A stretch of DNA of 63,315 nt, filler included, from Octopus bimaculoides (lineage: Eukaryota), in the NCBI RefSeq assembly GCF_001194135.2. It is 8 parts of 8 records of this genome, joined end to end, with 100 filler letters (N's around TTAATTAATTAA, not from the genome) between each part and the next. Parts side by side here need not be neighbours in the genome. Positions count along the whole stretch, not along the records: positions 24,623 to 44,695 come from NC_069003.1; 7 more parts are not named here. One strand, given 5' to 3'. The notes beneath the pieces were generated by a model. That model made no database searches. It worked only from the letters and a program-made list of their open reading frames with translations, and was not told the origin of the DNA. This document shows positions 41,083 through 41,436 of this stretch, in pieces (position 1 is the first letter of the stretch; every line of letters starts with the position of its first letter). The translations under genes and the position numbers were made by a program.

Positions 41083-41436
41083 ACCTCTGTGTTTTTCACA
41101 CTTACTAATGCTGTTATTGTTATTATTGTTCAGTGAACAGCGCGATTGAATGGCAAACCGCAGTTTCGTGGCTGCTTTCTTGTTTAAAAGTTCGGCGTGC
41201 ATTCGGGTCTTGGAGCACTTGGCCGCATTTCTGTAGCTCGTCCTTCCTTTGTAAGTGACTCTGATGACAATATTCTCCTGCACCAGTTTGCTCATCATCT
41301 CCTCCGTTTCTTTCAAACTTAATCCATGTTTCCGCGAGGCCATGTGGCAAATATTTTCGAAATCAGGTCGGGCTTTGCGGCTTCGCAAACGACCGATAAT
41401 GTCCAGTATCAAATCTTTTGCGGTGTTCTCTGTCAT
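40228..41436 (-). CDS. SAMD1: First coding exon of a SAMD1-like (atherin-like) winged-helix chromatin protein; 403 codons ending at a phase-0 GT donor
   Basis: ATG at 41436 in context ccaagATGa. The N-terminus ILDIIGRLRSRKARPDFENICHMASRKHG...KLVQENIVIRVTYKGRTSYRNAA closely resembles the SAMD1 WH domain as I recall it (ILDTIDSLRSRKARPDLERICRM..RRHG...KLIQQRAVLRVSYKGSISYRNAA). The frame is open to ...PCKRGRPVSRRK, followed by AAG|gtaaaa at 40228/40227 and then (CA)/(TA) intronic sequence. No SAM domain was seen, so orthology is unproven. Confidence 0.88.

What the first reader, a model, noticed from the sequence alone, without database searches (positions are those of the whole stretch)
41220..41436. 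Invertebrate SAMD1-type winged-helix domain with the CpG-reading residues intact
Seen: the first 73 or so codons give ILDIIGRLRSRKARPDF...VIRVTYKGRTSYRNAA. Established: this WH family (SAMD1, KAT6A/B N-terminus, ZMYND11) binds unmethylated CpG. In SAMD1 the basic RK of RSRKARP and the YK of the wing (SYKG) contact DNA, and both are present here. The sequence is closer to SAMD1 than to KAT6 (KKQKQRP) as I recall them. Inference: a mollusc may have a SAMD1-like reader of unmethylated CpG, a function characterised mainly in vertebrates, which would imply an older CpG-island-like targeting system.
Basis: partly seen in the sequence, partly recalled or inferred. Interest (0 to 1): 0.82.

Follow-up and report, generated by a model that had tools for sequence, protein, structure and literature searches.

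The report
Octopod SAMD1-like chromatin reader, first exon
The flagged stretch is the start of a real, conserved octopus-type gene whose first domain closely matches the human SAMD1 DNA-binding domain that reads unmethylated CpG. It belongs to a widespread invertebrate protein family that combines SAMD1-like ends with a KAT6-like histone-reading middle, so SAMD1 is probably not vertebrate-specific as published.

Summary
Codons 1-72 (41436 down to 41221) give MTENTAKDLILDIIGRLRSRKARPDF...VTYKGRTSYRNAA. This is a SAMD1_WH domain (Pfam E=1.5e-24). Its nearest solved structure is human SAMD1 WH (51-55% identity; predicted model 0.9 A RMSD), ahead of KAT6A (33%) and ZMYND11. All seven published SAMD1 DNA-contact residues are conserved.

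The domain opens a 403-codon exon (41436..40228). The exon also encodes a poly-Asn linker, a second small winged-helix-like block homologous to the vertebrate 'SAMD1 small helical domain', and an AT-hook. It ends at a donor site. No later exons are found in the piece.

The closest orthologue is from Argonauta hians (89% identical in WH1). It continues with a KAT6-type double PHD finger and a SAMD1-type SAM domain, and has no acetyltransferase domain.

This WH-WH2-DPF-SAM family occurs in corals, molluscs, brachiopods, nemerteans, flatworms and arthropods. Databases name it inconsistently ('KAT6B-like', 'atherin'), and the literature calls SAMD1 vertebrate-specific.

The inference of an ancient CpG-island-like system is not: fewer than 10% of octopus CpGs are methylated, and CpG-binding KAT6 WH1 was already known to be ancient. 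CpG binding itself is untested.

The parts
41434..41436 (-). Start codon (ATG) of the gene
   Evidence: First ATG after an in-frame TAA 15 nt upstream, with A at -3 (GCCAAGATGA). The Argonauta, squid-like, gastropod, chiton and insect orthologues start at the aligned methionine.
40228..41436 (-). Coding exon 1 (403 codons): WH1, poly-Asn linker, WH2/SHD-like block, Ser/Thr-rich linker, AT-hook
   Evidence: Open frame. tblastn with the Argonauta and squid-like orthologues aligns from M1 to ...KRGRPVSRRK and stops at 40228. DNA similarity to the relative's mRNA (74-77%) also ends exactly at 40228. pN is 0.20-0.28 against pS of about 0.82 in the three conserved blocks.
41227..41412 (-). WH1: SAMD1-type winged-helix domain (aa 9-70). 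DNA-contact residues are R18, R20, K21, R23, Y62, K63, R69
   Evidence: Pfam PF21524 E=1.5e-24. PDB 6lui SAMD1 WH E=8e-19. All 7 published contact residues are conserved. AlphaFold model pLDDT 89, H-H-H-beta-beta. Foldseek top hit is 6lui_A, RMSD 0.9 A, 55% identity.
41140..41226 (-). Conserved C-terminal extension of WH1 (aa 71-99), predicted as one long helix
   Evidence: Model helix H71-99. The motif K..K......LN...A..L..A is conserved in the mollusc orthologues and is 100% identical to Argonauta over aa 66-93. Function unknown.
40732..41130 (-). Low-complexity linker (aa 103-235), 33% Asn, encoded by AAT/AAC trinucleotide repeats
   Evidence: Translation. It shows as the ATT repeat on the plus strand at about 41017-41080. 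The Argonauta linker is much longer and also Asn/Thr-rich.
40582..40725 (-). WH2 / SHD-like block (aa 238-285): VSREQIELWWHAQGF...LPNGKLVLT
   Evidence: Conserved across phyla. 78% identical to Argonauta. hhalign of invertebrate-only WH2 against the vertebrate SAMD1_SHD region gives probability 87%, E=4.3e-6. The profile weakly hits KAT6B WH2 8e4v, E=0.028. Some members hit Pfam Linker_histone or SAMD1_SHD, but the window copy alone does not. Model pLDDT 72, H-H-H-beta-beta. Foldseek best matches are linker histones H5/H1.0 but are not significant.
40228..40269 (-). AT-hook-like basic motif KPPCKRGRPVSRRK (aa 390-403) closing exon 1
   Evidence: The RGRP core with basic flanks is conserved in cephalopod, gastropod and chiton orthologues, and appears as KGRP/RGRP in many fragments. 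The last 19 residues are identical to Argonauta. Calling it an AT-hook rests on the known GRP-core consensus (my own knowledge) and was not tested by an HMM.
40226..40227 (-). Splice donor GT of intron 1 (AAG|GTAAAA), phase 0
   Evidence: Sequence. Protein and DNA similarity to the orthologues stops here. Many ORF-style predictions from other species read '...KRK|V' into junk at the aligned position.
24623..40225 (-). Part of intron 1 (at least 15.6 kb, 23% N gaps): dispersed SINE-like repeats and microsatellites, no further exons detected
   Evidence: tblastn with the C-terminal halves of P0001, P0002, P0005, P0007 and P0087 finds no DPF or SAM exon. No Rfam families or tRNAs.

Best explanation
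This is the first coding exon of an octopod gene for a SAMD1-like multivalent chromatin reader.

Shown here:
- The exon encodes an N-terminal winged helix of the SAMD1 type with every known DNA-contact residue intact.
- It also encodes a second small winged-helix-like block homologous to the vertebrate SAMD1 small helical domain, and a terminal AT-hook-like motif. It then ends at a splice donor.
- Its closest orthologues continue with a KAT6/DPF-type double PHD finger and a SAMD1-type SAM domain, and lack any MYST acetyltransferase domain.
- The family is old, present in Cnidaria and Bilateria.

Inferred mechanism:
- WH1 docks on CpG-containing DNA. By analogy to SAMD1, R20/K21 sit in the major groove, Y62/K63 in the minor groove, and R18/R23/R69 contact the backbone. 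CpG methylation probably disfavours binding.
- WH2 and the AT-hook add low-specificity DNA affinity.
- The downstream DPF reads the histone H3 tail.
- The SAM domain polymerises or recruits SAM-containing partners, giving avid binding at CpG-dense, unmethylated chromatin.
- Vertebrate SAMD1 would be the derivative that lost the DPF.
For: Domain identity: Pfam SAMD1_WH E=1.5e-24. PDB ranking is SAMD1 > KAT6A > ZMYND11 by sequence and by predicted fold. The seven contact residues from PMC8115922 are all conserved.

Gene reality: a 403-codon ORF, which chance does not give. pN is far below a saturated pS. The exon end coincides with a donor and with the end of similarity to a relative's mRNA. The squid-like orthologue P0001 is an uninterrupted ORF on 2.6-3.2 kb contigs in 113 run assemblies, consistent with an expressed mRNA.

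Architecture of orthologues: Argonauta P0087 is 89% identical in WH1 and identical at the exon end. Its parts match SAMD1 WH (E=2.6e-16), KAT6A DPF (E=8e-27) and SAMD1 SAM (E=1.2e-15), with no MYST hit. P0001 gives the same result.

WH2 and vertebrate SAMD1_SHD: hhalign probability 87%, E=4e-6. Vertebrate SAMD1 is WH-SHD-SAM.

Family breadth: 357 representatives at E<=1e-30. 69 of the top 150 have WH1(-WH2)-DPF-SAM. Named members come from corals, brachiopod, gastropods, chiton, nemertean, flatworms, chelicerates, crustaceans and insects.

Tree: the window pairs with Argonauta at 97% bootstrap, inside a 172-sequence group that holds human SAMD1 and is apart from vertebrate KAT6 and ZMYND11.
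Against: - The DPF and SAM exons are not in the piece, so the full architecture of this particular gene is inferred from orthologues.
- Expression in this species was not tested, and the window ORF is not on record in the public gene-call index.
- No binding data exist for any invertebrate member. Conserved contact residues do not prove CpG or methylation specificity.
- Support for the split between the SAMD1-like group and KAT6+ZMYND11 is only 65% on a 66-column NJ tree.
- No bona fide invertebrate KAT6 (MYST-containing) WH1 could be obtained for the tree.
- The window's own WH2 copy has no Pfam hit, and its fold match is not significant.
Confidence: 0.78

Rival explanations
1. It is the N-terminal exon of the octopod KAT6 (MOZ/MORF/Enok) histone acetyltransferase, as the NCBI names of several homologues ('histone acetyltransferase KAT6B-like') imply.
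For: Homologues in Haliotis, Liolophura, Lingula, Limulus, Gigantopelta, Rhipicephalus and Montipora are named KAT6A/B-like. The order WH1-WH2-DPF is the same as the KAT6 NEMM-DPF module (PMC9881136). The DPF is closest to the KAT6A DPF.
Against: None of the full-length homologues scanned has a MOZ_SAS/MYST domain. They are 440-850 aa long and end in a SAM domain whose best match is SAMD1 SAM. WH1 is 51-55% identical to SAMD1 against 33% to KAT6A. WH2 matches SAMD1_SHD.
Confidence: 0.04
2. The gene is as described, but its WH1 is a general or differently specific DNA-binding module. It would not be a methylation-sensitive CpG reader, because unmethylated CpG carries little positional information in a genome with under 10% CpG methylation.
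For: The octopus methylome is sparse and restricted to gene bodies (PMC9476566). The authors of the KAT6A study themselves question whether Enok WH1 binds CpG in CpG-island-free Drosophila. The family persists in many arthropod lineages, whose methylation levels I did not check. The extra DNA and histone modules (WH2, AT-hook, DPF) could dominate targeting.
Against: All seven residues whose mutation weakens SAMD1 binding to CpG DNA are invariant or nearly so across 31 diverse homologues. The predicted fold superposes on the DNA-bound SAMD1 WH at 0.9 A. Conservation this strict suggests the same DNA-recognition mode.
Confidence: 0.15
3. The exon is a dead relic (pseudogene or unexpressed duplicate) and no functional protein is made from it in this species.
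For: Only one exon is visible. The downstream sequence is repeat-rich and 23% gaps. The ORF is not on record among public gene calls.
Against: The 1209-nt frame is intact in an AT-rich context (0 of 20000 random frames stay open). Purifying selection is evident (pN 0.2-0.28 against pS about 0.82). The start, donor and exon end are conserved and identical to Argonauta.
Confidence: 0.03

Closest known systems
Vertebrate SAMD1 (Atherin): WH - SHD - disordered region - SAM. Binds unmethylated CpG islands, polymerises through SAM, and recruits L3MBTL3 and KDM1A (PMC8115922, PMC11969672)
   Same: WH1 is 51-55% identical, with all seven DNA-contact residues. The predicted fold is 0.9 A from 6lui. A second block is homologous to SAMD1_SHD and lies in the same order. 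The orthologues' C-terminal SAM best matches SAMD1 SAM (E about 1e-15, against 1e-6 for PHC3).
   Different: The invertebrate proteins carry a double PHD finger between WH2 and SAM, plus a conserved AT-hook. Vertebrate SAMD1 has no DPF. The cephalopod linkers are poly-Asn/Thr rather than the mammalian Pro/Ala-rich region. Function is untested. The host genome lacks vertebrate-style global methylation.
KAT6A/KAT6B/Enok (MOZ/MORF) N-terminus: WH1 - WH2 (H15-like) - DPF - MYST HAT
   Same: The WH1-WH2-DPF order is the same. The orthologues' DPF best matches the KAT6A DPF (E=1e-30 and 8e-27). WH1 has the same fold (Foldseek ranks 2-4). The WH2 profile weakly hits KAT6B WH2.
   Different: There is no MYST acetyltransferase domain, and a SAM domain ends the protein instead. 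WH1 is only 33% identical and has RSRKARP rather than KKQKQRP.
ZMYND11 (BS69) N-terminal WH
   Same: Same Pfam family and fold class (Foldseek ranks 5-6).
   Different: Only 20-28% identity, PDB E=0.12. The wing YKG..SYRN is not aligned. There are no Bromo, PWWP or MYND domains in the orthologues.
CXXC-domain readers of unmethylated CpG (CFP1, KDM2A/B, MLL, TET) - analogy only
   Same: The proposed job is the same: tethering chromatin modifiers to unmethylated CpG. My own knowledge is that these readers also predate vertebrate CpG islands.
   Different: Unrelated zinc-finger fold. Not tested here.

Membership tests
SAMD1-like winged-helix domain family (Pfam PF21524 SAMD1_WH) | Sequence match to the family HMM above the curated gathering score | tested here: met
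   86.3 bits against a cut-off of 24.5, E=1.5e-24, model positions 2-63 of 63.
SAMD1-like winged-helix domain family (Pfam PF21524 SAMD1_WH) | Winged-helix fold (three helices plus a beta-hairpin wing) superposable on the solved SAMD1 and KAT6A WH domains | tested here: met
   AlphaFold model pLDDT 89, H6-19 H26-37 H41-53 E57-62 E65-70. Foldseek: 6lui_A RMSD 0.9 A, TM(target) 0.89; KAT6A 8h7a and 7y43 at RMSD 1.1-1.2 A. This is a predicted structure, not an experimental one.
SAMD1-like winged-helix domain family (Pfam PF21524 SAMD1_WH) | Conservation of the DNA-contact residues defined by mutagenesis in SAMD1 (R43, R45, K46, R48, Y87, K88, R94) | tested here: met
   They map to R18, R20, K21, R23, Y62, K63 and R69, and all are identical. 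They are invariant or at least 90% conserved in 31 homologues.
SAMD1-like winged-helix domain family (Pfam PF21524 SAMD1_WH) | Preferential binding to unmethylated CpG-containing DNA | not testable with these tools
   Needs EMSA, ITC or PBM with recombinant protein.
SAMD1 orthologue group (WH - SHD - SAM) | WH domain closer to SAMD1 than to the KAT6 or ZMYND11 paralogues | tested here: met
   phmmer bits are 70.7, 35.7 and 15.9. The NJ tree places the window in the group that contains human SAMD1. Caveats: split support is 65%, and no invertebrate MYST-containing KAT6 was in the tree.
SAMD1 orthologue group (WH - SHD - SAM) | SAMD1 small helical domain (PF24971) after the WH | tested here: inconclusive
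   The window copy alone gives no Pfam hit. The invertebrate WH2 profile matches the vertebrate SHD region by hhalign (probability 87%, E=4.3e-6). 3 of 16 WH2 sequences hit SAMD1_SHD directly, but that set included one shark SAMD1 sequence, so at least two are invertebrate.
SAMD1 orthologue group (WH - SHD - SAM) | C-terminal SAMD1-type SAM domain | tested here: inconclusive
   Not present in the piece, as the exons lie beyond it or in gaps. Present in the orthologues: Argonauta aa 775-836 matches SAMD1 SAM 6luk at E=1.2e-15, and P0001 at E=7e-16.
SAMD1 orthologue group (WH - SHD - SAM) | No other globular domain between SHD and SAM (the vertebrate layout) | tested here: not met
   The orthologues carry a double PHD finger there. 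I therefore file the gene as SAMD1-like, or as an ancestral-type variant, and not as a canonical SAMD1.
KAT6 / MYST acetyltransferases (MOZ, MORF, Enok) | MYST (MOZ_SAS, PF01853) catalytic domain | tested here: not met
   Absent from Argonauta P0087, P0001, P0135 and P0146 in Pfam. Full-length P0087 gives no MYST hit against the PDB. This cannot be tested on the window itself beyond exon 1.
KAT6 / MYST acetyltransferases (MOZ, MORF, Enok) | N-terminal WH1-WH2(H15)-DPF module | tested here: met
   WH1 and WH2 are in the window. The DPF in the orthologues best matches the KAT6A DPF. The module is shared, but that alone does not make the gene a KAT6.
ZMYND11 | WH followed by PHD-Bromo-PWWP and a C-terminal MYND domain | tested here: not met
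   The orthologues have no Bromo, PWWP or MYND domains. WH similarity is weak (E=0.12).

The most novel reading that the evidence does not exclude
SAMD1 is not a vertebrate invention. It would descend from a pre-bilaterian WH1-WH2-AT-hook-DPF-SAM protein, still present from corals to octopods and insects. That protein shares its whole N-terminal DNA and histone reading module with KAT6 acetyltransferases. Vertebrates would have lost the DPF and reduced WH2 to the 'small helical domain'; sharks and chimaeras still keep a linker-histone-like WH2. If so, one ancestral CpG/H3-tail reading cassette was wired to two opposite outputs, MYST acetylation and SAM-mediated repression, before vertebrate CpG islands existed.
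Probability: 0.6. Interest if true: 0.55.

Novelty: new variant of a known kind. Interest (0 to 1): 0.42.

Why it matters
SAMD1 was described in 2021 as a vertebrate-specific CpG-island repressor (PMC8115922). I found no paper in the searchable library that discusses an invertebrate counterpart.

The window gives a clean cephalopod example of a large, uncharacterised and inconsistently named family. The family joins SAMD1-type WH and SAM domains to a KAT6-type double PHD finger.

That matters in three ways:
- It corrects an annotation problem: many 'KAT6B-like' RefSeq entries have no acetyltransferase domain.
- It suggests how SAMD1 and KAT6 are related.
- It offers a way to ask what an unmethylated-CpG reader does in a genome where most CpGs are unmethylated anyway.

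It does not by itself show an ancient CpG-island-like system.

Tried and rejected
1. Plus-strand reading of the given coordinates gives only stops.

2. Search for downstream DPF and SAM exons in 24623..40227, using five orthologues including the close Argonauta protein with sensitive tblastn settings. Only chance hits appeared.

With WH1 alone it found 2 proteins. With a WH1 profile it returned mostly short fragments. The window's own species never appeared.

4. Exact look-up of the window ORF in public gene calls: not on record. The species is therefore placed only as 'octopod, not Argonauta hians itself'.

5. Attempts to obtain a bona fide invertebrate KAT6 WH1 (Enok, Hydra, mollusc) failed. 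The ambiguous RKARP-type fragments turned out to be WH-DPF-SAM genes; for example locus L005 has WH1, DPF and SAM within 3.4 kb. Contigs for P0031 were too short to tell. No supplement text is held for the KAT6A paper.

6. A Biopython bootstrap timed out and was replaced by my own NJ code.

7. The first WH2-versus-SHD comparison included a shark sequence in the 'invertebrate' profile. I discarded it as partly circular and repeated it without that sequence.

8. The WH2 fold search gave linker-histone top hits, but at E of about 0.6-1.4, so I treat it as inconclusive.

9. Rfam and tRNA scans of the piece found nothing.

10. A CpG observed/expected scan around the 5' end gave about 1.0-1.3 against 0.66 for the piece, but GC is only 0.33-0.37. 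I do not interpret this as a CpG island.
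Full report
OBSERVATION

The quoted peptide is not on the plus strand, where 41220-41436 translates to a string of stops. On the minus strand an ORF runs from the ATG at 41436 down to 40054. Its first 72 codons (41436..41221) read MTENTAKDLILDIIGRLRSRKARPDFENICHMASRKHGLSLKETEEMMSKLVQENIVIRVTYKGRTSYRNAA.

An in-frame TAA lies 15 nt upstream of the ATG, and the start context has A at -3. The orthologues begin at the aligned methionine.

The match is far beyond chance:
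- Pfam SAMD1_WH (PF21524) scores 86 bits against a gathering score of 24.5, E=1.5e-24, over essentially the whole model.
- None of 20000 composition-matched random sequences kept a 403-codon frame open.

WHAT THE DOMAIN IS

Against all PDB sequences the order is:
- human SAMD1/Atherin WH (6lui, E=8e-19, 70.7 bits)
- KAT6A WH1 (7y43, E=7e-8, 35.7 bits)
- ZMYND11 WH (9loa, E=0.12)

Identity over the core is 51-55% to SAMD1, 33% to KAT6A and 28% to ZMYND11.

Stielow et al. 2021 (PMC8115922) defined the DNA contacts of SAMD1-WH by mutagenesis. R45/K46 contact the major groove, Y87/K88 the minor groove, and R43, R48 and R94 the backbone. In an ungapped alignment these map to R18, R20, K21, R23, Y62, K63 and R69 of the window protein, and all seven are identical. 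They are invariant or at least 90% conserved in a 31-sequence alignment of diverse homologues.

An AlphaFold2 model built on that alignment is confident (mean pLDDT 89) and has the H-H-H-beta-beta winged-helix topology followed by a long helix. Foldseek against the PDB puts the SAMD1 WH-DNA complex first (6lui_A, RMSD 0.9 A over 66 columns, TM on target 0.89). The KAT6A WH-DNA complexes come next, then ZMYND11, and then generic bacterial winged-helix regulators.

THE GENE AROUND IT

The frame stays open for 460 codons, but similarity to the orthologues ends at codon 403 (...KPPCKRGRPVSRRK). There the sequence reads AAG|GTAAAA.

Two independent lines put the exon end at 40228:
- tblastn alignments of the squid-like protein P0001 and the Argonauta protein P0087 both stop there.
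- blastn similarity (74-77%) to P0001's mRNA contig L001 stops at exactly that base.

Many ORF-style gene calls from other species read '...KRK' followed by 'V' and junk at the aligned position. A conserved phase-0 intron beginning GT would produce exactly this.

Exon 1 (41436..40228) therefore encodes, in order:
- WH1 (aa 9-70) with a conserved helical extension (aa 71-99)
- a linker that is 33% asparagine (aa 103-235)
- a second conserved block (aa 238-285)
- a Ser/Thr-rich linker
- an AT-hook-like KRGRP motif at its very end

Against the squid-like mRNA, the three conserved blocks show pN of 0.20-0.28 with pS of about 0.82, which is saturated. This is strong purifying selection.

The 15.6 kb downstream on the coding strand (24623..40227) is 23% N. 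It is otherwise filled with dispersed SINE-like repeats and microsatellites. No further exon could be found there with five orthologues as queries. There are no Rfam families or tRNAs.

THE SECOND BLOCK (WH2)

The block VSREQIELWWHAQGF...LPNGKLVLT aligns across phyla, with consensus G.S...IE.W...L..E...G....L.NGNY.

Evidence on its identity:
- Its model is moderate (pLDDT 72) and again H-H-H-beta-beta.
- The best Foldseek matches are linker-histone H5/H1.0 globular domains, but they are not significant (E 0.6-1.4).
- A profile of the block weakly hits the KAT6B WH2 structure 8e4v (E=0.028).
- Among 16 members scanned, which included one shark SAMD1 sequence, 4 hit Pfam Linker_histone and 3 hit SAMD1_SHD (PF24971). 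The window's copy alone hits nothing.
- Vertebrate SAMD1 proteins are WH-SHD-SAM in Pfam.
- A profile-profile comparison of an invertebrate-only WH2 alignment with vertebrate SHD regions gives probability 87%, E=4.3e-6 over 48 columns. An earlier run that included a shark sequence was discarded as partly circular.

I conclude, with moderate confidence, that this block is the counterpart of both the KAT6 WH2 and the SAMD1 small helical domain.

RELATIVES AND FULL ARCHITECTURE

The closest full-length protein is GAB1610773.1, a hypothetical protein of the octopod Argonauta hians (P0087, 844 aa). It is 89% identical over aa 1-102, 78% over WH2, and identical over the last 19 residues of the exon. 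The window therefore comes from an octopod cephalopod. The exact species could not be established.

P0087 continues, after the exon-1 end, with two further domains:
- a double PHD finger whose best PDB match is the KAT6A DPF (E=8e-27; KAT6B, DPF2, DPF3 and PHF10 follow)
- a C-terminal SAM domain whose best match is the SAMD1 SAM (E=1.2e-15)

It has no MYST domain.

The squid-like P0001 gives the same picture. Its SAM matches SAMD1 at E=7e-16, with the next family (PHC3) at 1e-6. Its DPF matches KAT6A at E=1.4e-30. P0001 is encoded without interruption on 2.6-3.2 kb contigs in 113 sequencing-run assemblies, as expected of an expressed mRNA.

An exhaustive profile search found 357 representatives at E<=1e-30. 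Among the top 150:
- 49 have WH1-WH2-DPF-SAM
- 20 have WH1-DPF-SAM
- 31 have WH1-SAM
- the rest are fragments

Named DPF-containing members come from:
- corals (Montipora)
- a brachiopod (Lingula)
- gastropods (Haliotis, Gigantopelta)
- a chiton
- a nemertean
- flatworms (Schistosoma, Paragonimus)
- horseshoe crabs, ticks and mites
- a copepod, krill and a springtail
- several insect orders

Every named member without a DPF is a vertebrate (teleost, shark, chimaera), apart from one beetle isoform. Shark and chimaera SAMD1 still match the invertebrate WH2 model and Linker_histone.

Source names are inconsistent. They include 'histone acetyltransferase KAT6A/B-like', 'Atherin', 'sterile alpha motif domain-containing protein 1', 'DPF2' and 'uncharacterized'.

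PHYLOGENY

I built an NJ tree of 190 unique WH1 cores (66 columns, Kimura distance, 300 bootstraps). It puts the window with Argonauta (97%) inside a 172-sequence group that includes human SAMD1. Vertebrate KAT6 (70%) and ZMYND11 (100%) fall outside. The split between the SAMD1-like group and the other two has 65% support.

One limitation remains. I could not obtain any MYST-containing invertebrate KAT6 WH1. The ambiguous invertebrate fragments I could resolve were themselves WH-DPF-SAM genes. The argument against KAT6 identity therefore rests mainly on architecture: a SAM domain and no MYST domain.

HOW IT LIKELY WORKS

Shown:
- the domain composition
- conservation of the contact residues
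- the predicted fold

Inferred:
- WH1 binds CpG-containing DNA in the SAMD1 manner and is probably hindered by CpG methylation.
- WH2 and the AT-hook add non-specific or AT-minor-groove affinity.
- The DPF reads the H3 tail, as KAT6/DPF-type double PHD fingers do.
- The SAM domain polymerises or recruits SAM partners, as in SAMD1 (PMC8115922, PMC11969672). The result would be avid, multivalent chromatin binding.

None of these activities has been measured for any invertebrate member.

An older origin of the SAMD1 lineage is supported. This contradicts the statement that SAMD1 is vertebrate-specific (PMC8115922). A full-text search for SAMD1 together with 'invertebrate' found no paper that addresses it.

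An 'older CpG-island-like targeting system' does not follow, for three reasons:
- The KAT6 WH1 was already traced to Hydra (PMC9881136).
- In Octopus bimaculoides fewer than 10% of CpGs are methylated. The methylation sits in the bodies of a subset of genes, with little at promoters or transposons (PMC9476566).
- Unmethylated CpG is therefore the genomic default there. A reader of it could at most sense CpG density and avoid methylated gene bodies.

VERDICT

This is a genuine, selectively maintained first exon of an octopod SAMD1-like gene.

The gene belongs to an old, widespread, unpublished WH1-WH2-DPF-SAM architecture that links SAMD1 with KAT6.

Interest is moderate. The sequences are already in public databases under automated names, and no function has been tested. 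However, the family-level picture corrects the literature and opens clear experiments.

Noticed in passing
window 40732-41130 (- strand; seen as the ATT repeat on + at about 41017-41080): A coding trinucleotide microsatellite (AAT/AAC)n gives poly-Asn runs of up to 14 residues inside exon 1. The Argonauta orthologue has a far longer Asn/Thr-rich linker (844 aa in total), so this linker expands and contracts quickly between octopods.
   Followed up: partly
window 34828-35074 and 35150-35396: Two 247-nt copies are 100% identical and separated by a 10-N gap. This is most likely a gap-closing or assembly duplication, not biology.
   Followed up: no
window 27255-27577, 27989-28078, 34944-35041, 35266-35363, 35582-35790, 36733-36902: A dispersed SINE-like repeat family (69-90% identity, both orientations), each copy adjoining CA/TA microsatellites, fills intron 1. 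No tRNA-like head was detected by ARAGORN or Rfam.
   Followed up: partly
Proteins P0003, P0006, P0010, P0011, P0012, P0014, P0017, P0018 (alignment A5): ORF-style gene calls from many species all run '...(K/R)GRP..KRK|V' into unrelated sequence at the position of the window's exon-1 donor. This suggests a phase-0 intron conserved across phyla right after the AT-hook.
   Followed up: partly
P0151 (KAL3245769.1, Rhipicephalus microplus, 850 aa): A tick protein carries three tandem SAMD1_WH domains (Pfam 205 bits, 3 stretches) and no DPF or SAM. This architecture is not described for the family. It could be a real triplication or a gene-model fusion.
   Followed up: no
P0149/P0256 (Stegostoma tigrinum) and P0171 (Callorhinchus milii atherin): Cartilaginous-fish SAMD1 keeps a WH2 that still matches both the invertebrate WH2 model and Pfam Linker_histone, as well as SAMD1_SHD. 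It is an intermediate between the invertebrate WH2 and the bony-vertebrate SHD. The shark protein is named 'SAMD13', which looks like a misnomer.
   Followed up: partly
P0135/P0244 (Paragonimus), P0131/P0245 (Schistosoma): Flatworm members are 1180-2044 aa long, with WH1 starting about 300 residues in. Paragonimus also has a DUF3504 domain. They are named 'KAT6A/MYST3/MYST4', although no MOZ_SAS domain was found in the one member scanned (P0135).
   Followed up: partly
L005/L006 (ENA marine metagenome scaffolds, including a TARA Oceans sample), 9989-13350: A compact WH1-DPF-SAM gene of about 3.4 kb, of a crustacean-like type, sits on eukaryotic contigs inside marine metagenome assemblies, next to tyrosine-phosphatase and kinase genes.
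   Followed up: partly
window 39500-42500: CpG observed/expected is about 0.9-1.3 around exon 1 and its 5' flank, against 0.66 for the whole piece, although GC is only 0.33-0.42. This may reflect an unmethylated 5' end, but the windows are small and rich in repeats.
   Followed up: no
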